IMG/VR virus record: IMGVR_UViG_3300031707_000001 | Location: 62,001-126,000 of that record | Strand: one strand, 5' to 3' | DNA length: 64,000 bases | Part shown: piece by piece, positions 1,643 through 50,645 of the stretch | How the letters are laid out: each line of letters begins with the position of its first letter | Position numbering within the stretch: the first letter of the stretch is position 1 | The notes under the pieces: model-generated | The model's input: only the letters and a program-made list of their open reading frames with translations | Databases searched by the model: none | What the model was told of the DNA's origin: nothing | Program-made: the position numbers and the translations under genes

Positions 1643-1760
1643 GGCAGGGTAGCTCAGTTGGTAGAGCACGTAATCGTACAGTTTGTATGAACTGGCTACA
1701 GCAACCAAAATTACCCTTATAAGGTCGTGGTCGTGGGTTCGAATCCCACCCCTGCCACCA
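1643..1760 (+). tRNA. tRNA-like gene (Ile, anticodon TAT, if the insert is removed) with a 42-nt insert in the anticodon stem
   Basis: Acceptor GGCAGGG/CCCTGCC+A+CCA, D arm GCTC-AGTTGGTA-GAGC, T arm GTGGG-TTCGAAT-CCCAC. Removing 1671-1712 gives CGACC-CTTATAA-GGTCG. Confidence 0.75.
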
Positions 1761-2544: not shown

Positions 2545-4149
2545 ATGATCAGAGGACACAATAAGGATGTGCTCTACGAGCACACGTTAGACCATGCCCT
2601 GGAATTCTTCAGCAAGGCCGGCAGCTTATACGTCATGGGACCACGGGGTCGTAAGCCCTTTGAGCCCTATGGCGGCGAGCATGCTGAAACGTCTGCGCTG
2701 GCATTGTTCCAGGCCGTTTGGGCCGTCAACTACAGGGAAGCACACCTCGATGCTATGCGGCTGTTGTTCTGGCTGCGTGACTGTCGGGGAGGGGCGGGTA
2801 ACCGTTCCGGCTTCCGTTCTTGTCTTCACTGGCTGGCAACCGATGCCGGTCCGGAGGCCAGGGAGTGGTTGAAGCTAAACCTGTCTCGGATTCCCGAGCA
2901 TGGTCGTATGGATGATCTTGAATGCCTGTTTGGTACGCCTCTGGAACCGGAGGCTGCCAAGCTATGGGCAGCAGGCATCAAAGCAGCCGATCACTACGCC
3001 TTGAAATGGGCCAAGCGGAACATGCGTCCGCTGCAGAAGGTCCTGGGCGTGAACGAAGCCGGTCTGAGAAAGCTTTTGTCAAAGCCGGAGAGAAAGACAG
3101 TTGAGCAGCACATGTGCTCCAACTTGTCCATTTGTCCACATTGCAAGAAACTGACCCACTGGTCAAAGCCATCAACAAAGAACACAGGTAACCCGTGGGA
3201 TCGAGCAGGTGAAGGCACGTTGGCTACCGATCTTTATGCGTGTTCCGAATGCGGGACTATGCAACGAGGGCCAATCAAGTGGGAGCCGATCGAGTACAAA
3301 GCTGTGCCGTCCAAGGCCATGAAGGCATATGCAAAAGCATTTGCCAAGCACGACCCGGAAGGATTTACAGGCTTCAAGGATAAGCTGAAGAAGGGTGAGA
3401 CCAAGGTTAATGCTTCAGTCCTGTTTCCACACGACTGCAAGCATGGGGTTGACAACGGTGATCCCGAAATCGCCGATGCCCAGTTCGATGCTTTGCCCGA
3501 CTACATGGGCAAGACCAACCAGCGCATCATGTGCCTGGTGGATACTTCAGGCAGTATGAGCGCTGCCGTCGCAGGCGGTACAGTCATGCGGATCGACGTG
3601 TCGGTTTCGCTTGGCTTGTATTGCAGTGACCGATTGGGCAAAGAGAATCCACTGTACCGGAAGTATATGGAGTTCTCCTCCAATCCATCCTTCAAGGATT
3701 GGAAAGGCAAGAAGTTCTCTGAAGCTTGTCAGGACCAGGATGGGTGGTGTGGCTCGACTAACATCGAAGCCGCATTGGACTTCCTTCTGGCCTTCGCCAA
3801 GAAGCAGAAGATTCAGCCGGAATATATGATCAATACACTGTTGATCCTATCAGATATGCAATTCGATCAGGGTACGGGAGCAGGCAATACCAATCGAACC
3901 GTGGTAGAGAATTGCATGATACGTTGGGCAGACGCAGGTTACGACATACCTAAAATTGTTTACTGGAACCTCGCTGGGTACGCCGGACAGCCGGCAACTT
4001 CCCAGTCTGAGAATATCGGACTCGTGTCTGGTTTCTCGCCTTCTGTTCTGAAGGCGATCTTGGCCGGTGATGATTTTAGTCCTGTCGCTATCATGCGCCG
4101 AGCCCTGGATAAATACCAGGTAACGGCTCCCGCAAATAAGAGCCGATGA
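2545..4149 (+). CDS. DUF2828-family protein (TROVE/Ro60-like helical domain + C-terminal vWA)
   Basis: LFWLRDCRGGAGNR, IPEHGRMDDL, VEQHMC..W..IEYKAVPSKAM, CLVDTSGSM (MIDAS), GSTN, LILSDMQFD, IVYWNL, GLVSGFSP. RBS AAGGAG. Confidence 0.85.
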   Translation: MIRGHNKDVLYEHTLDHALEFFSKAGSLYVMGPRGRKPFEPYGGEHAETSALALFQAVWAVNYREAHLDAMRLLFWLRDCRGGAGNRSGFRSCLHWLATDAGPEAREWLKLNLSRIPEHGRMDDLECLFGTPLEPEAAKLWAAGIKAADHYALKWAKRNMRPLQKVLGVNEAGLRKLLSKPERKTVEQHMCSNLSICPHCKKLTHWSKPSTKNTGNPWDRAGEGTLATDLYACSECGTMQRGPIKWEPIEYKAVPSKAMKAYAKAFAKHDPEGFTGFKDKLKKGETKVNASVLFPHDCKHGVDNGDPEIADAQFDALPDYMGKTNQRIMCLVDTSGSMSAAVAGGTVMRIDVSVSLGLYCSDRLGKENPLYRKYMEFSSNPSFKDWKGKKFSEACQDQDGWCGSTNIEAALDFLLAFAKKQKIQPEYMINTLLILSDMQFDQGTGAGNTNRTVVENCMIRWADAGYDIPKIVYWNLAGYAGQPATSQSENIGLVSGFSPSVLKAILAGDDFSPVAIMRRALDKYQVTAPANKSR

Positions 4150-4247: not shown

Positions 4248-4276
4248 TTGAGTAGAACATCGAACCGTGCCATAAT
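4248..4276 (+). promoter_or_regulatory. sigma70-like promoter of the RAMP-array operon
   Basis: TTGAGT 4248-4253, 17 nt, TG-n-CATAAT 4268-4276. GAGGT RBS precedes GTG at 4300. Confidence 0.55.
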
Positions 4277-4299: not shown

Positions 4300-5049
4300 G
4301 TGAGTAAGGAAAGCAAGTTGAGTAGTTTGACGAAGTGGGTAAAGGTCCGGTTGACGTTCATAGAAGACACGTTGGCCACGAATCCGGAAGACAAAGAACT
4401 CCACGATCGGTTCATTTCCAGCAAGGCGCCGGACGGTTCCGAGCGCAAGCTGGAGAACGACAGTCTGGAAGTTCGGGAGAAGATGGGCACAACCATCTTC
4501 CTGCGGGATCCCAAGACCGGTCAGTTCTGGATGGGAAACCATATGCTTAAGGGTTTCCTGAAAGCAGCCGGCGAAGTCTTCCGGGTCACCGAAGAAGAAC
4601 CGGAAGTCGCCGAAGAGAAGAAGCCTGAGGAAAATGGGAAGGACAAGAAGCCCAAGAAGGTGTCCAAGCAATGGGGCAACATCACGGGCAAGATCAACCA
4701 ATTGGTGAAAGTATACCCCAAGCAGATGTTCATCAATAGTCCGGGCGACAAACCCACCACGGCGCCGGATAGCATCTTGCAGAGAAGTCTGCGTGCTCAA
4801 ACCCAACAGGGACCCAGAGTAGCCCTGGCAAAATCCGAAGCCGTCCAAGCGGGATCGTATCTGGACGCCACAATCATGCTCATCGGCGACAAGCCGGTGA
4901 CCATGGCCATGATCAAGGAATGCCTTGACTATGGGCTGGTCCACGGTCTTGGACAGTGGAGAAATGCCGGCTACGGCGCCTTCACATACGAGATCCTGGA
5001 GGAAGGTGAAGGTCTTCCCGAGGAAGCCAGAGCTTTCTTGAAAGCGTAA
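4300..5049 (+). CDS. stand-alone Cas7/Csm3-like RAMP-superfamily protein
   Basis: N-terminal strand VRLTFIEDTLAT, helix MLKGFLKAA, thumb-like RSLRAQTQQGPRVALAKSEAV, C-terminal G-rich loop LDYGLVHGLGQWRNAGYGAF. No other cas gene in the window. Confidence 0.8.
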   Translation: MSKESKLSSLTKWVKVRLTFIEDTLATNPEDKELHDRFISSKAPDGSERKLENDSLEVREKMGTTIFLRDPKTGQFWMGNHMLKGFLKAAGEVFRVTEEEPEVAEEKKPEENGKDKKPKKVSKQWGNITGKINQLVKVYPKQMFINSPGDKPTTAPDSILQRSLRAQTQQGPRVALAKSEAVQAGSYLDATIMLIGDKPVTMAMIKECLDYGLVHGLGQWRNAGYGAFTYEILEEGEGLPEEARAFLKA

Positions 5050-5058
5050 CGCTACAAT

Positions 5059-5098
5059 GGGAATAGGGCCAGTCGCCTAGCGTTTGAGCCCTATTCCC
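5059..5098 (+). promoter_or_regulatory. hairpin between the RAMP stop codon and the array
   Basis: Perfect 11-bp inverted repeat GGGAATAGGGC (5059-5069) / GCCCTATTCCC (5088-5098). Confidence 0.7.
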
Positions 5099-5105
5099 TA
5101 CTCTC

Positions 5106-5940
5106 CTTGTGCAGTAAAGCCAATTAAGCGAGAGTTGTGTACGGTGAGGTTTGGTGATGGTGACGTTGGGTGGCGTTTGGTGCGGTGATGTCCGGTGTCG
5201 GTAAAGTGGGGTAACGTCACGTGCTGTATGAGTAGTGTTCGGTCTTGTCCTGCCACGTCTAGTAACAGTGTTGCGCTGCGTGGTTCGGTCTAGTTACAGT
5301 GGTGTGGGGCGCTCTGTAGTCCAGTACTGTCATGGTTATGTGAAATACTGTCTAGTTAAGGTGGAGTAAAGTCCTGTATCGTCAGGTTCTGGTGATGTGG
5401 AGTTTAGTCCCATATCGTCAGGGTGAGGTATTGCCGAGTGATGTGCGGTGACGTAGTGTCCGGTTTCGTGATGCGTAGGTAATGTCTAGCCCGGCATTGT
5501 CGAGCAATAGTGTTGTGTGGTCCGGTACTGCGTGGTCCGGTATAGGTAATGTATAGCACAGTGATGTGATGCATAGTTTTGGTGGTGTTTGCTAAAGCTA
5601 TGTGCAGTAATGGTGGAGTGCGGTCCAGCCATGTTTCGTGTGGGTCAAGTCAAGCCTTGCCAAGTCTCGTTTCGGTTCCTCATATGTGTAGTGATGCGGC
5701 GTTACGGTGGCGTCATGCCATGCGAGGTGATGTGATGGTAGCGTCAGGCAGCGTAAAGCTGAGTGTTGGTGTCGTAAAGTTCAGCCAAGTCCGTGTAGGG
5801 TTCTGTGCGGTCCTGTTGAGGTGTGGCAAAGCGCTGTTAGGCCATGGTTTGGTTGGGTCTAGTCGAGCGGTGTCACGGTCATGTGAAGCCAGGTCGACTA
5901 CAGTGATGGTGTAGTTGAGTCAAGTGTTGCGCCGTGGTGC
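5106..5940 (+). ncRNA. periodic NNN-GY pentamer array with NNN-RGT hexamer punctuation (putative guide-RNA array)
   Basis: Hand parse gives ~160 units. Over 90% of pentamers end in GT/GC (9 exceptions counted), and 24 hexamers end in GGT (20) or AGT (4), with modal spacing 31 nt. Confidence 0.85.
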
Positions 5941-5943
5941 TTC

Positions 5944-5976
5944 GGGCTCCCTGCTGTCGGGGAGCCCTTTCTTTTC
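5944..5976 (+). terminator. intrinsic terminator closing the array
   Basis: GGGCTCCC/GGGAGCCC 8-bp stem followed by TTTCTTTT, 3 nt after the last pentamer. Confidence 0.85.
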
Positions 5977-6016
5977 AAACATTCAACAATTGGTTTTTAA
6001 CTTAGAAAGGAACAGC

Positions 6017-6145
6017 ATGAAGAAAGGATATACGTTGGTTGAAGTAATGATTGCTGTTGTTTTCCTGGCTATAGCGATTGCTGTAGTAATGGGGGCAATA
6101 CAATCAACCGGGTGTGGCCGGTTTATAGGAGATATGCTTCGATGA
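6017..6145 (+). CDS. 42-aa peptide with a type IV prepilin N-terminal cleavage/methylation motif
   Basis: MKKG|YTLVEVMIAVVFLAIAIAVV matches the class III signal G|FTLxE followed by a hydrophobic helix. AAGGAA RBS. Confidence 0.7.
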   Translation: MKKGYTLVEVMIAVVFLAIAIAVVMGAIQSTGCGRFIGDMLR

Positions 6146-6339: not shown

Positions 6340-6543
6340 AGGAGTAAACGCTATAAAAACAGCCAAGCATAGCTTCTTGGATAGTAAGGGACGCTGCTGG
6401 ACTGCCTGCTCCGAGTGTGAGCGTGGTGGTAATGGATCTGACACGGACAAGTGTATGTGTGGTTATCACATAAGAAGATTCAATAAACTCGGATGTTTTA
6501 TTGGTATACTGTTAAAAGGAATAAAAGCAAAGGAGTGAAAGGT

Positions 6544-7701
6544 ATGAATTCATCTAGTATTGCAGGTCAAAGGAAGATATGGCCAACTCTCTACAAGAAA
6601 ACTTCTACTGGGGCTGATCAAGCGTGGACAGTTTCAGTAGTCGGGAACCAGATTATTACGAAGTACGGTCAGGTAGGTGGGAAGATACAAGAGACGCCTC
6701 CGACTACTTGTGAAGGCAAGAATATTGGCAAAGCCAACGAAACTACGGCCGAGGACCAGGCGTTGTCGGAAGCCCAGTCGCTGTGGGAGAAGAAGCTAAA
6801 GAAAGACTACAGTGAATCGTTGGACAAGGCTCGCAAAGGTGAAGCCAGTTCATTGATTGAGGGTGGTATCCTTCCCATGCTTGCGAAGCGCTATGACCAG
6901 GACGGTGAGAAGATCGTATGGCCCGCTGTCTGCCAACCAAAGTTGGATGGCCACAGATGTATTGCCATGGTAGACGACAAAGGCAAGTGCACGTTGTGGA
7001 GCCGTACTCGTAAGCCTATCAAGAGTATGCCTCATATTGTGGACGCTATTGAAAAACTGGGATGTGTTGGTATACTCGACGGTGAGCTGTACAACCACGA
7101 TTATCACAACAAGTTTGAAGAACTATGTCACTTCATACGGTCATCTGAATCGGTTAAAGGATGTGAAATTGTACAGTATCATATATACGATACGATTCCG
7201 TTGCCAGCTAACCAGTCAACGGCAACATTTATTCGTCGTATGGGACAACGTGATATAGTACTACGTAAAGCCGATAAAGACATATTGGTGTCCGTGGAAA
7301 CTATTAGGGTAGAAAACGAAGATGAACTTATGGTAGCCTTTGAAAAGTTTCGCAAGGACGGATATGAAGGCGCCATAATTCGTAACGCAGCCGGGTTGTA
7401 CGTGAACAAGCGCTCTTATGATCTGCAAAAGGTCAAAGAGTTTGAGGATACTGAGTTCAAGGTAGTCGATGTTATCGAAGGCAAGGGTAAACTTGCTGGC
7501 CACGGCATCTTTGTTTGCGAAACCAAAACTGGTATGCAGTTCGAAGCTAAGATGATTGGTGAACTGGAAGCACTGAAGAAATTCTGGAAGGATCCCAAGC
7601 TCGCCATTGGCAAGATGCTGACGGTTCAGTTCCAGGGGTATACAACCAAGAACAAGGTGCCTCGATTCCCGGTGGCGCTTAGGTTCCGTGAGGACATATG
7701 A
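6544..7701 (+). CDS. lig: ATP-dependent DNA ligase with WGR-like N-terminal domain
   Basis: PMLAK, motif I QPKLDGHRC (KxDG), LDGELY, YHIYD, GYEGAIIR, KRSYDLQKVKEF, TVQFQGYT...PRFPV. Confidence 0.92.
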   Translation: MNSSSIAGQRKIWPTLYKKTSTGADQAWTVSVVGNQIITKYGQVGGKIQETPPTTCEGKNIGKANETTAEDQALSEAQSLWEKKLKKDYSESLDKARKGEASSLIEGGILPMLAKRYDQDGEKIVWPAVCQPKLDGHRCIAMVDDKGKCTLWSRTRKPIKSMPHIVDAIEKLGCVGILDGELYNHDYHNKFEELCHFIRSSESVKGCEIVQYHIYDTIPLPANQSTATFIRRMGQRDIVLRKADKDILVSVETIRVENEDELMVAFEKFRKDGYEGAIIRNAAGLYVNKRSYDLQKVKEFEDTEFKVVDVIEGKGKLAGHGIFVCETKTGMQFEAKMIGELEALKKFWKDPKLAIGKMLTVQFQGYTTKNKVPRFPVALRFREDI

Positions 7702-13861: not shown

Positions 13862-14343
13862 AGCGAAAGACGCACAAGACAGACTGGGCCGTACTTCGAC
13901 GGGTAGCAGAGCGAAGCCCGAAGAGCTTTGCTCTGCGCATACGCAGGCGCAACGTTGGGCTATTGCGAGCCCTGGAGAAGCACAATTGGGTCTTCTCTTC
14001 CCACGTGGGATGTCCGCACTGTGTCGACTGCGAAACTTGCCTTTGGATAGAGGCAATGAAAGCAGTAAAGAACGTCAACGATGGATGTTGCGGAGTGCGT
14101 TTTGGTGGACTACCCCTACGTAGAATACATATGATTGCATATGATTCTACTTCAGAAAAGGTGTACTCACCAAACACCCTGCCCGGAGATCTGTTTCTAC
14201 GATACTTCAACGACGCAGTACGCTTCGTGAAAGCCCACATAGCGTGGACCAAAAAGCCCTACTGGGGCAGGAAGCTCAATAAACCAAAAAGCCCTACTGG
14301 GGCAGGAAGCTCAATAAACCATGAAGAAACTCAACACACGTGA
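13858..14343 (+). CDS. Cys-rich paralogue family member 4
   Basis: VLRRVAERSPK; GCPHC..C..CLW; CCGVRFGG; FVKAHIAWTKKPYWG. Confidence 0.7.
   Translation: MKRKTHKTDWAVLRRVAERSPKSFALRIRRRNVGLLRALEKHNWVFSSHVGCPHCVDCETCLWIEAMKAVKNVNDGCCGVRFGGLPLRRIHMIAYDSTSEKVYSPNTLPGDLFLRYFNDAVRFVKAHIAWTKKPYWGRKLNKPKSPTGAGSSINHEETQHT
14248..14320. repeat. 35-bp tandem duplication
   Basis: ACCAAAAAGCCCTACTGGGGCAGGAAGCTCAATAA at 14248 and 14283. Confidence 0.9.
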
Positions 14344-49196: not shown

Positions 49197-50645
49197 ATGT
49201 CAACAATGCAGGAAATTCTCGCTTCTACACGTAAACTTATCGAAGTCAAGAAAGCAGAGTTCAATAGTACTCTGAAGAAGGCTGACGATAAGGCACTGAA
49301 CAACACAGGGGCGGGCGATGATAGCCCAATCACTCGTGGTCATGCGTTGGATGCTACGCAGTCAGCGCTTGAACCTACAAAGAAGCCCTTGATTACTTCT
49401 GATGCTATGACAGCACAGCCTCCTTCGGACGGTAAAGGCACAAAGGCTGATCTGAAGGGCAAGAACGAAGGCAACGTGACAGACCGTGCTGACAAGTTGG
49501 AAGCCGGCGATGCCGTTCTGGAGCCTAAGAAAGAGCCCTTGATTACATCAGATGCAAAGGCCGATCCCGAAGCAGGAGCCTCGGGTCAGACAGCAAAGCA
49601 AGCCACAGCAAAGTTGGCCAATGAGATCCTGAAGGACATTCGGGAATATCAGCAGAAGCAAGCTGCGCCGAAGGCTAAGCAGGACGTGAAAGCGGATGCA
49701 AAAGTAGCTTCGACGAAGAAAGCTGATCCAGATCCGGACCCCGATCCAGATCCCGATCCAGATCCGGACCCTGATCCCGATCCAGATCCGGACCCTGATC
49801 CAGGCAAGGGAAAGAAAGGCAAGAAGGTTGTAAAAGAGGAAGATAAGAAGGAAGCTTCTGGTCCTCAGCTTGAGTTGACAACTGACGTGTTGGCCAAGAT
49901 TGCCTCGATCGTACTTTCTTCTGAAGAAGGTGCACAGTTTGTGGAAGGCCAGCTTGCCAAGGCAGCCGGTGCAGAAGCTGCACAGGAGACTTTGGCTTTT
50001 TTGGCAGAACAGTCCGAACTGGCTGAAAAACAGGCTGCTTTCGAGCAGGGTCAGGCGGACGCCGAAGCATTGATTCAGCAAGCGCTGTATCAGGCCGGTC
50101 GGGAAGCGGGCCAAAAAGAAGCAGCGGCAGCTCAACAGAATAAGTTGATGGCGGGTCTGGGACAGAAAGTTGCCCAGGCAGGCATCGATGAAATGATGGG
50201 CGCTGGTGCTGCTCCTATGGAAGGTGGCGCTGGTGGAGCCGGCGGACCGGATGTTGGCGCCGCAGAACTAGCTGGTGGAGCTGGTGGAGCTGGTGGCGTT
50301 GGTGGAGCCGGCGAAGCTGGTGGGGAAATCACAGAAGAAGATCTGATGATGGCTCTTCAAGCATTGGTGCAGGAAGGCACAATTCAGCCCGAGGAAGCTC
50401 AGGCGGTTGTGGAGGCCTTGACGGGCGGCGGAGCGGGTGGTGAAGCGGCAGGAGCAGCTCCTGCAGCAGCCCCTGAGGCAGCTCCTGCGGAAGCACCAGC
50501 TGCAGTAGGTGGTGCAGAACACGAGGCATCTGAAACTCCTGAAAAGGAAAAGAAAGAAGAGAAGGAATCTTCTGAAAAGTCAGTTGAGAAGAAAGCCGCT
50601 GCTCTTCTGGATGCCATCCGTCAGGTCCGTGCAAGTCGTAAGTAA
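49197..50645 (+). CDS. putative scaffolding protein with (DP)13 repeat
   Basis: Charged, low-complexity helical protein between protease and capsid genes; duplicated LE....LEP.K.PLITSDA. Confidence 0.6.
   Translation: MSTMQEILASTRKLIEVKKAEFNSTLKKADDKALNNTGAGDDSPITRGHALDATQSALEPTKKPLITSDAMTAQPPSDGKGTKADLKGKNEGNVTDRADKLEAGDAVLEPKKEPLITSDAKADPEAGASGQTAKQATAKLANEILKDIREYQQKQAAPKAKQDVKADAKVASTKKADPDPDPDPDPDPDPDPDPDPDPDPDPGKGKKGKKVVKEEDKKEASGPQLELTTDVLAKIASIVLSSEEGAQFVEGQLAKAAGAEAAQETLAFLAEQSELAEKQAAFEQGQADAEALIQQALYQAGREAGQKEAAAAQQNKLMAGLGQKVAQAGIDEMMGAGAAPMEGGAGGAGGPDVGAAELAGGAGGAGGVGGAGEAGGEITEEDLMMALQALVQEGTIQPEEAQAVVEALTGGGAGGEAAGAAPAAAPEAAPAEAPAAVGGAEHEASETPEKEKKEEKESSEKSVEKKAAALLDAIRQVRASRK
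49725..49802 (+). repeat. 13 x 6-bp GAY-CCN coding repeat (Asp-Pro)
   Basis: gat cca gat ccg gac ccc ..., 13 dipeptides counted. Confidence 0.95.

What the first reader, a model, noticed from the sequence alone, without database searches (positions are those of the whole stretch)
5156..5910. Second-level periodicity: an NNN-GGT hexamer punctuates the pentamer array about every 31 nt
Seen: 24 six-nt units end at 5161, 5202, 5233, 5269, 5300, 5336, 5362, 5393, 5424, 5480, 5511, 5547, 5583, 5614, 5645, 5676, 5708, 5739, 5770, 5801, 5822, 5848, 5879 and 5910. Twenty end in GGT and four in AGT. Spacings are mostly 31 (5 pentamers + 1 hexamer), and nearly all others are 31 +/- multiples of 5. Inference: the hexamer marks guide boundaries, processing sites or a fixed filament length of about six subunits. 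The array would then store about 25 guides of roughly 18 variable nt each, gaining or losing whole pentamers by slippage.
Basis: partly seen in the sequence, partly recalled or inferred. Interest (0 to 1): 0.85.

Follow-up and report, generated by a model that had tools for sequence, protein, structure and literature searches.

The report
Hexamer-punctuated VIPR guide RNA array
The 31-base rhythm is real: this jumbo phage carries a recently described VIPR RNA-guide system (a small CRISPR-like protein plus an RNA made of 5-base repeats). Here the long repeat tract is cut into about 25 short modules by a 6-base NNN-GGT unit, and related phages swap these modules much as CRISPR arrays swap spacers.

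Summary
Observation confirmed. Thirteen of 23 spacings are 31 nt, against 1.6 expected for random placement (P<1e-5).

The array lies directly downstream of a 249-aa Cas7-like RAMP gene (4300-5049) and ends in a strong terminator. It matches the VIPR systems (Vipr protein plus pentamer-repeat vrRNA) described in 2026 bioRxiv preprints.

The hexamer punctuation is family-wide. Of 91 homolog loci, 87 carry a 5.0-5.35-nt periodic array. In 96 distinct arrays the hexamer spacings peak at 31, then 36 and 26 nt. In gut-phage relatives the hexamer is a conserved AA-N-GG-Y motif followed by a purine.

Modules behave as units. The closest relative shares only the leader, the terminator and exactly one hexamer-bounded module with the window.

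Target searches gave one suggestive module-limited match for a relative. For the window they gave only a chance-level candidate. RNA processing is untested.

The characterised SUSP1 vrRNAs have no hexamers and carry 3' tails. I therefore rate this a new variant of a known kind. It may be the "staggered array" of the preprint's Fig. S18, which I could not see.

The parts
4248..4276 (+). sigma-70-like promoter candidate upstream of the RAMP gene
   Evidence: Consensus scan, 9/12 matches with an extended -10 TG. Weak: such sites are no more frequent here than in shuffles.
4300..5049 (+). vipr-like gene: 249-aa single-domain RAMP (Cas7-like)
   Evidence: More than 670 homologs; one is JGI-named Cmr6/Cas7 RAMP. 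AF2 model has pLDDT 87.8. Top Foldseek hits are type VII Cas7 (E 3.8e-9) and Csm3. The family profile hits Cas7 at 1e-5 and SUSP1 Vipr at E 0.1. hhalign against SUSP1 Vipr gives 74.5% probability, E 2.7e-5, over the G-loop.
5059..5098 (+). 11-bp inverted repeat (hairpin) between the gene and the array, with no T-run
   Evidence: Read directly from the sequence. It is not evident in the relative L005. Role unknown.
5100..5135 (+). conserved leader of the array
   Evidence: 86% identical to L005 1884-1920, while the array bodies differ.
5136..5935 (+). vrRNA-like array: about 130 NNN-G-Y pentamers cut into about 24 modules by NNN-[G/A]GT hexamers
5910)
   Evidence: sequence of each; independent parse.
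5425..5480 (+). longest module (10 pentamers plus hexamer GTAGGT), used for the target searches
   Evidence: The 22-position pattern found nothing in the viral or metagenome collections. The 20-position pattern hit one gene family: a 681-aa ORF, 6 metagenome contigs and 1 Gemmatimonadaceae MAG. The skipped base falls on the wobble position there. Two unrelated genome hits show this is chance level.
5548..5583 (+). the one module shared with the closest relative's array
   Evidence: blastn 5545-5583 versus L005 2080-2118, 87% over 39 nt. The neighbouring modules are unrelated.
5944..5977 (+). intrinsic terminator closing the array transcript
   Evidence: 10-bp stem (8 GC) followed by TTTCTTTT. 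Conserved in L005.

Best explanation
The region is the guide-RNA array of a VIPR system in a ~211-kb phage.

Transcript (inferred). The RAMP gene at 4300-5049 and the array at 5136-5935 appear to be transcribed on the + strand up to the terminator at 5944-5977.

Protein-RNA contacts (by analogy with the SUSP1 cryo-EM work). One Vipr protomer binds each 5-nt unit. It holds the constant G-Y and leaves the first two variable bases free to pair with DNA, skipping every third target base. In this clade the first G of the canonical GGY is free to vary. This fits an invariant Gln at the position of the SUSP1 Asp that reads that G.

Role of the hexamer. The hexamer is a full GGY preceded by three variable bases instead of two. 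It acts as punctuation. It divides a tail-less, back-to-back array into about 24 independent guide modules, mostly 5 pentamers plus 1 hexamer (31 nt, six protomers, about one turn of the free filament).

How the break could work. The extra base breaks the strict 5-nt register between neighbouring protomers. The filament therefore ends or kinks there, or the site is cut by a nuclease.

Shown: the pattern, its conservation, the RAMP fold, gene-array linkage and modular turnover.

Inferred: protomer binding, the reading rule in this clade, and what physically happens at the hexamer.
For: The pattern is real and far from chance.

Gene identity and linkage:
- The gene has a RAMP fold.
- G-loop alignment to SUSP1 Vipr reads GQWRN versus GDWRP. 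W and R are kept, and Asp is replaced by an invariant Gln.
- 87 of 91 homolog loci carry a periodic array of 5.0-5.35 nt.
- 49 of 50 well-parsed arrays lie on the gene's strand.

Match to the literature: the published VIPR description and structure fit.

Punctuation is family-wide:
- Hexamer spacings: 31 nt (336), 36 (191), 26 (183), 41 (89).
- Modal module size is 6 units, and 76% of modules have 5-8 units.
- Hexamer position 4 is G in 80%, against 24% at the equivalent pentamer position.
- A purine follows the hexamer in 85% of cases.
- In gut phages the hexamer is a fixed AAAGG[C/A] motif.

Modules behave as units:
- Window and L005 share one module only.
- Gut-phage arrays carry the same modules with different neighbours.
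- Homology-run ends are enriched at module edges: 24% versus 16-17% expected, z about 5.

A strict one-extra-base-per-turn rule is unlikely, because runs of 10 or more pentamers without a hexamer exist.

Target evidence: an 11-unit module of relative L006 matches a viral ORF at 22/22 read positions. The match is in frame, with the skipped base on the wobble position. Both flanking modules match at chance level.
Against: - No RNA data: neither transcription nor processing is shown.
- A typical 6-unit module would specify only about 10-12 nt. That is shorter than any characterised vrRNA (9-16 repeats), so single modules may not bind specifically on their own.
- Target evidence is thin. Six long modules were searched in the viral collection and one hit was found. 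My rough chance estimate for that outcome, including the frame requirement, is 0.01-0.1.
- The window's own candidate target is no better than chance. There were two unrelated genome hits for the same pattern, and target GC is 67% against 49.6% for the phage.
- A test for strand coherence within modules showed excess coherence, but shifted partitions scored about the same. It therefore gives no sharp boundary signal.
- Enrichment of homology breakpoints at boundaries is modest, 1.4-1.5 times.
- Substitution rates at the three variable positions are similar, so they do not single out a two-base code.
Confidence: 0.6

Rival explanations
1. One continuous guide or scaffold. The ~800-nt RNA is used unprocessed and coated by a single long Vipr filament. 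The hexamers are hinges or slack, about one extra base per helical turn. They relieve strain or keep register and do not separate guides.
For: Modal spacing of six units equals the six-protomer turn of the free SUSP1 filament. No tail or cap elements lie between modules. Strand-coherence scores do not drop when partitions are shifted. The upstream module matches the window's candidate target at 7/12 positions in phase.
Against: Spacing varies from 21 to 56 nt in the window, and runs of 10-13 pentamers without a hexamer occur. Modules are exchanged individually between arrays and have different neighbours. The hexamer is a conserved sequence motif, not merely an extra base. The one perfect target match stops at both hexamers. 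A contiguous ~470-bp gapped target is implausible.
Confidence: 0.2
2. The hexamers are neutral indel noise from replication slippage in a pentamer repeat, with no function.
For: Module lengths vary by multiples of 5. Occasional 4-mers and 7-mers occur in relatives.
Against: Spacing is far too regular (P<1e-5). Insertions are almost always +1, never drift to -1, and carry a specific motif: G at position 4, A/T at position 2, purine after. The pattern recurs in 96 arrays from proteins only 31-45% identical.
Confidence: 0.03
3. A DNA-level signal. G-Y every 5.17 bp is two per 10.3-bp helical turn, so the tract would be a phased protein-binding or curved-DNA element (origin, packaging or partition site) rather than an RNA.
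For: 31/3 = 10.33 bp is close to the B-DNA repeat. The tract lies among replication genes (ligase, DHH).
Against: The tract has strong strand asymmetry and is G+T rich. It has a same-strand terminator and a conserved leader. It is tightly linked to, and co-oriented with, a RAMP RNA-binding gene in 87/91 loci. The three interspersed positions are hypervariable, which is unlike iterons. Published VIPR RNAs of the same design are expressed and co-purify with Vipr.
Confidence: 0.03

Closest known systems
VIPR systems, type II as in Escherichia phage SUSP1 (bioRxiv 10.64898/2026.04.26.720920 and 10.64898/2026.04.26.720927)
   Same: Phage-encoded small RAMP next to RNAs built of 5-nt units that have a constant G-Y core and hypervariable bases. 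The G-loop W-R residues are conserved. The locus lies next to a DNA ligase gene in both phages. One relative's module obeys the published one-base-skip, wobble-aligned rule.
   Different: SUSP1 vrRNAs are separate ~100-nt RNAs of 9-16 NNGGY units in one unbroken register, each ending in a structured pseudoknot tail. Here about 155 units run without tails. The core is NGY rather than GGY. A six-nt NNN-GGY unit recurs about every six units. Protein similarity to SUSP1 Vipr is confined to the G-loop (hhalign 74.5%).
'Staggered' VIPR arrays and non-canonical repeat types (YNNNG, NNNGG, NNNNG; WGT/NN) mentioned in the VIPR and Evo-PIN preprints
   Same: The YNNNG consensus is the same unit as NNN-G-Y read one base later. 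The preprint describes back-to-back vrRNAs in which the end of one marks the start of the next.
   Different: The legend speaks of 1-nt overlapping positions, and the figure is not held, so identity cannot be checked. No text in the four papers I searched mentions a hexamer, a 31-nt period or ~6-unit modules. Staggered arrays were not among the architectures confirmed by RNA-seq.
CRISPR arrays with Class 1 (Cas7 backbone) effectors
   Same: RAMP backbone protein. An array of short variable guides separated by a constant element. Guide content turns over rapidly between close relatives, while the leader and terminator stay conserved.
   Different: The 'repeat' is only about 6-9 nt. The guides themselves carry an internal 5-nt protein-binding rhythm. 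No cas1/cas2 or other cas genes are nearby. Pairing is gapped rather than contiguous.

Membership tests
VIPR system (Vipr + vrRNA) | Small single-RRM RAMP protein with G-loop and thumb | tested here: met
   AF2 pLDDT 87.8. Foldseek hits to type VII Cas7 and Csm3 with E down to 3.8e-9. Invariant GLGQWRN..G motif.
VIPR system (Vipr + vrRNA) | Sequence homology to a characterised Vipr (SUSP1) | tested here: inconclusive
   Profile versus PDB chain 36pp_D gives E 0.1. hhalign gives 74.5% probability, E 2.7e-5, over only 48 C-terminal columns. The Foldseek library predates the Vipr structures.
VIPR system (Vipr + vrRNA) | Tandem pentanucleotide repeats with a constant core and hypervariable bases, next to the gene | tested here: met
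   132 NNN-G-Y pentamers begin 77 nt after the stop codon. Same in 87/91 homolog loci.
VIPR system (Vipr + vrRNA) | Canonical GGY/NN unit | tested here: not met
   The first G is unconstrained in pentamers (G in 25%), and GGY appears only in the hexamers. The preprint allows a 'related consensus' including YNNNG.
VIPR system (Vipr + vrRNA) | Structured 3' tail after each 9-16-repeat tract (type II) | tested here: not met
   No non-periodic inserts within 5136-5935. No Rfam family or ribozyme in the tract. The SUSP1 tails are plainly visible for comparison.
VIPR system (Vipr + vrRNA) | Targets matched by NN with a one-base skip, the skip falling on the codon wobble position | tested here: inconclusive
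   Relative L006: 22/22 match, in frame. Window: the candidate is at chance level. Four other long modules gave no hits.
VIPR system (Vipr + vrRNA) | vrRNA expressed and co-purifying with Vipr | not testable with these tools
   Needs RNA-seq or pull-down.
CRISPR-Cas | Direct repeats of 20 nt or more with unique spacers, plus adaptation genes (cas1/cas2) | tested here: not met
   No such repeats in the tandem or direct repeat output. Neighbouring genes are a TROVE-like protein, a ligase and a DHH protein.
Staggered VIPR array (preprint Fig. S18) | Adjacent vrRNAs derived from positions overlapping by 1 nt, without spacers between them | not testable with these tools
   Only the legend is held. 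The +1 register shift seen here may or may not be what is drawn there.

The most novel reading that the evidence does not exclude
The NNN-GGY hexamer is a minimal 'repeat' that turns a VIPR transcript into a CRISPR-like array of about 25 one-turn mini-guides. Each mini-guide would be ~31 nt with six Vipr protomers and only ~10-12 specified bases. The extra base would end each filament, replacing the 3' pseudoknot cap of characterised vrRNAs. That would be the shortest natural RNA guide unit known, and a repeat-spacer logic inside a phage system proposed to predate CRISPR.
Probability: 0.4. Interest if true: 0.7.

Novelty: new variant of a known kind. Interest (0 to 1): 0.5.

Why it matters
VIPR is a months-old discovery. 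Its characterised guides are discrete, tailed RNAs of 9-16 repeats.

This clade has more than 670 protein homologs and hundreds of viral contigs. If it really packs dozens of ~6-unit guides head to tail, separated only by one extra base in a GGY unit, three things follow:
- It defines how filament length and guide boundaries are set without a cap structure.
- It lowers the minimal guide size for programmable DNA binding.
- It gives a concrete intermediate between a repeat-coded guide and a repeat-spacer array, which bears on the proposed VIPR-to-CRISPR origin.

It also gives annotators a simple rule (a period of 5.1-5.2 nt rather than 5.0) for recognising and segmenting such arrays.

Tried and rejected
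- Tandem Repeats Finder sees almost nothing here, only a 24-nt fragment. blastn of the array against phage records finds nothing. The array is visible only by periodicity.
- A GT-only periodicity scan missed the relatives' arrays, because their core is G-C or G-A. An all-base scan found them.
- Local decoding test: windows of 6-8 consecutive units from all the parsed arrays were compared with 1.8 Mb of fetched loci under nine reading rules. No rule beat shuffled controls. The only excess came from unmasked array remnants at 5-nt spacing.
- Stop-codon depletion in the variable triplets was uninterpretable, because of mixed strands and parses.
- Per-position substitution rates in homologous modules do not separate a two-base from a three-base code.
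- The strand-coherence test gave no sharp boundary signal.
- Exact-pattern scans returned nothing for the window module with 22 specified positions (viral and metagenome), L002, L014, L009 and L044.
- Other modules of L006 and of the window do not hit the candidate target contigs above shuffled controls.
- The candidate target ORFs have no Pfam, PHROG or phage-record match.
- Two other assemblies with the identical protein carry an identical array, so they show no within-lineage turnover.
- Protein-coding, CRISPR and tRNA-array readings of the tract were rejected on sight.

Full report
**1. The observation**

The sequence between about 5126 and 5935 on the + strand is a run of units ending in G-T, or less often G-C. 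Distances between successive GT dinucleotides are mostly 5, with 17 sixes.

I tiled the tract with a dynamic-programming parse. It allowed units of 4-7 nt and scored only the last two bases. It gave 132 pentamers and 25 hexamers. It places one hexamer at 5796 instead of 5801. It also adds a unit ending at 5687, which explains the single 32-nt spacing.

Thirteen of 23 spacings are 31 nt, and nine of the other ten differ from 31 by a multiple of 5.

Placing 24 hexamers at random among the units gives on average 1.57 spacings of 31 and a coefficient of variation of 0.84. The observed values are 13 and 0.19, and none of 100,000 trials reached either. The GT signal has its Fourier maximum at 5.16 nt, which is 31/6. 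Nothing comparable occurs elsewhere in the window.

The composition is as follows:
- Pentamers are N-N-N-G-Y with three fully variable positions.
- Hexamers are N-[A/T]-N-[G/A]-G-T.

A hexamer is therefore a unit with a full GGY (or AGY) core preceded by three variable bases.

**2. What the tract belongs to**

It starts 77 nt after the stop codon of a 249-aa ORF (4300-5049, +). It ends at a 10-bp GC-rich hairpin followed by a T-run (5944-5977).

The ORF has no Pfam, PHROG or NCBIfam match, but it has more than 670 homologs, one of them JGI-named Cmr6/Cas7 RAMP. Several lines place it among the RAMPs:
- An AlphaFold2 model built on 35 homologs has pLDDT 87.8.
- Its best structural matches are Cas7 of type VII and Csm3 of type III systems, with E down to 3.8e-9.
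- The family profile hits Cas7 (1e-5) and Csm4 in the PDB sequences, and more weakly the chain named SUSP1 Vipr protein (E 0.1).
- hhalign against the SUSP1 protein taken from the phage record gives 74.5% probability over the C-terminal G-loop.

**3. Linkage of gene and array**

Every one of the first eleven homolog loci has a stretch with 5.10-5.20-nt base periodicity next to or near the gene. Among all 91 loci fetched up to that point, 87 have such an array of 200-1000 nt. In the 50 best-parsed arrays, 49 lie on the gene's strand. The window itself is part of IMG/VR contig 3300031707_000001, which is 210,732 bp.

**4. The literature**

A full-text search found four 2026 preprints.

The first (10.64898/2026.04.26.720920) defines VIPR systems:
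- A phage-borne ancestral RAMP (Vipr) works with vrRNAs of 9-16 YNNGG pentamers followed by a structured tail.
- The NN bases pair with double-stranded DNA while one target base per unit is skipped, usually the codon wobble base.
- Seven types are listed, with alternative consensus units including YNNNG.
- "Staggered" and ribozyme-interspersed arrays are also mentioned.

The second (10.64898/2026.04.26.720927) gives structures:
- One protomer binds each repeat.
- The free filament has six protomers per turn, and the DNA-bound filament has five.
- G1 of the GGY is read by His17 and Asp177, G2 by Arg138 and Trp178, and Y3 by a pocket that includes Arg179.

In my family alignment the corresponding G-loop reads G-Q-W-R-N, against G-D-W-R-P in SUSP1. 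The Trp and Arg that hold G2 and Y3 are kept. The Asp that reads G1 is an invariant Gln. This fits units in which G-Y is constant and the preceding base is free. That link is my inference.

NNN-G-Y is the published YNNNG unit read one base later. The pentamer array as such is therefore a member of a known, very recent kind.

**5. Is the hexamer punctuation known?**

None of the four papers contains "hexa", a 31-nt period or modules of about six units. The structural paper says natural vrRNAs reach up to 30 repeats.

The legend of Fig. S18 in the first preprint describes staggered arrays. In these, vrRNAs come from positions overlapping by 1 nt, and the end of one marks the start of the next. 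This may be the same thing, but the figure is not held, and that architecture was not among those confirmed by RNA-seq.

The SUSP1 vrRNAs, read directly from the phage record, are NNGGT units in one unbroken 5-nt register followed by a hairpin tail. They have no hexamers.

**6. The punctuation is family-wide**

The same parse applied to relatives gives the following:
- L005 (81% identical protein, same synteny and terminator): NNNGGT hexamers at 31, 36 and 51 nt.
- L105 (64% identical): the same pattern.
- L001: NNNGG[C/A] hexamers.
- L006 and many gut-phage arrays: a fixed AAAGG[C/A] hexamer followed by A.

Over 96 distinct arrays the spacings are 31 nt (336 cases), 36 (191), 26 (183) and 41 (89).

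In the 50 best-parsed arrays:
- The modal module is six units, and 76% of modules have 5-8 units.
- Hexamer position 4 is G in 80%, against 24% at the equivalent pentamer position.
- The pentamer before a hexamer ends in a pyrimidine in 97% of cases.
- The unit after a hexamer starts with a purine in 85%.

The punctuation is therefore a conserved motif, not merely an extra base.

**7. Are modules units?**

Against its closest relative, the window's array shares only three things: the leader (5100-5135), the terminator, and one 36-nt stretch (5548-5583, 87% identical). That stretch is exactly one hexamer-bounded module flanked by unrelated modules.

Gut-phage arrays share individual modules with different neighbours. 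One module, for example, is present in six arrays in one context and in L079 in another.

Two breakpoint tests agree:
- Ungapped similarity segments end at the hexamer and start at the conserved motif before it.
- In a unit-level analysis, 24% of homology runs end on a hexamer and 24% start on the first unit of a module. About 16-17% is expected, giving z of about 5.

The enrichment is real but modest, because many runs end through point divergence.

**8. Do target matches break at hexamers?**

Typical modules have too few read positions for an exact-pattern scan, so I searched only long ones.

Relative L006. Its 11-unit module matched one viral contig at all 22 read positions. The match is in frame in a 586-aa ORF, with the skipped base on the wobble position. 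The third variable base agrees with the skipped base in only 3 of 11 units. Both flanking modules match at chance level at every offset tried.

The window's 10-pentamer module (5425-5480):
- It found nothing with the hexamer included.
- Without the hexamer it hit six homologous metagenome contigs and one Gemmatimonadaceae MAG. The hits are antisense to a 681-aa ORF, with the skip on the wobble position, and the flanking modules do not match.
- The same pattern also hit two unrelated genomes, and the target contigs have 64-69% GC against 49.6% for the phage. This candidate is therefore no better than chance.

Four other long modules gave nothing. Taken together, the target evidence is suggestive for the published reading rule and for module-limited pairing in this clade. 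It is not proof.

**9. Mechanism**

The best-supported reading is a tail-less, back-to-back VIPR array in which the NNN-GGY hexamer separates independent guide modules.

A purely structural "one extra base per turn" role is unlikely, for three reasons:
- Spacing ranges from 21 to 56 nt.
- Runs of 10-13 pentamers without a hexamer exist.
- The hexamer carries sequence information.

What happens physically at the hexamer is not shown. It could be a nuclease cut, the end of a filament, or a kink.

The main difficulty is that a six-unit module would specify only about 10-12 bases.

**10. Verdict**

The object is a new architectural variant of the recently described VIPR systems, and it may correspond to an unverified supplementary figure in the preprint. 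Interest is moderate.

Noticed in passing
window 1643-1757 (+) and 2545-4149 (+): A 115-nt tRNA-like element matches all 71 positions of the Rfam tRNA model (51.9 bits), but has 55 nt where the 13-nt anticodon arm should be, and ARAGORN calls no tRNA. It lies 790 nt upstream of a 534-aa DUF2828+DUF7788 protein (PHROG 850, 'RNA-binding protein'). This looks like a phage Ro60/TROVE-vWA-type protein with a tRNA-like (YrlA-like) partner RNA.
   Followed up: partly
window 6017-6145 (+): A 42-aa ORF directly after the array terminator carries a prepilin-type N-terminal cleavage/methylation domain (TIGR02532, 21.6 bits, cutoff 16.3). It is conserved at the same place in L005.
   Followed up: partly
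window 6493-7701 (+); L102 29511-30611: An ATP-dependent DNA ligase gene follows the VIPR locus here. A DNA ligase gene also abuts the VIPR locus of phage SUSP1. This may be shared synteny or coincidence.
   Followed up: no
L045, L047, L054, L056, L065, L068, L090 (arrays about 5600-6100): Gut-phage arrays repeatedly contain a hexamer immediately followed by a 4-mer (AAAGGC TATG), which restores the pentamer frame. This suggests the local motif matters rather than the cumulative frame.
   Followed up: no
L009/L010 2101-2670 and 6801-7110; L014 5901-6210 and 6321-7030; several others: Some homolog loci carry two separate periodic arrays, one several kb from the RAMP gene.
   Followed up: no
window 14248-14321: A perfect 35-nt tandem duplication, 2.1 copies.
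   Followed up: no
window 49725-49803 and 50270-50499: In-frame-looking 12/18/24-nt and 9-nt tandem repeats (GATCCAGATCCG... and AGCTGGTGG...), probably low-complexity repeat regions of a structural protein.
   Followed up: no
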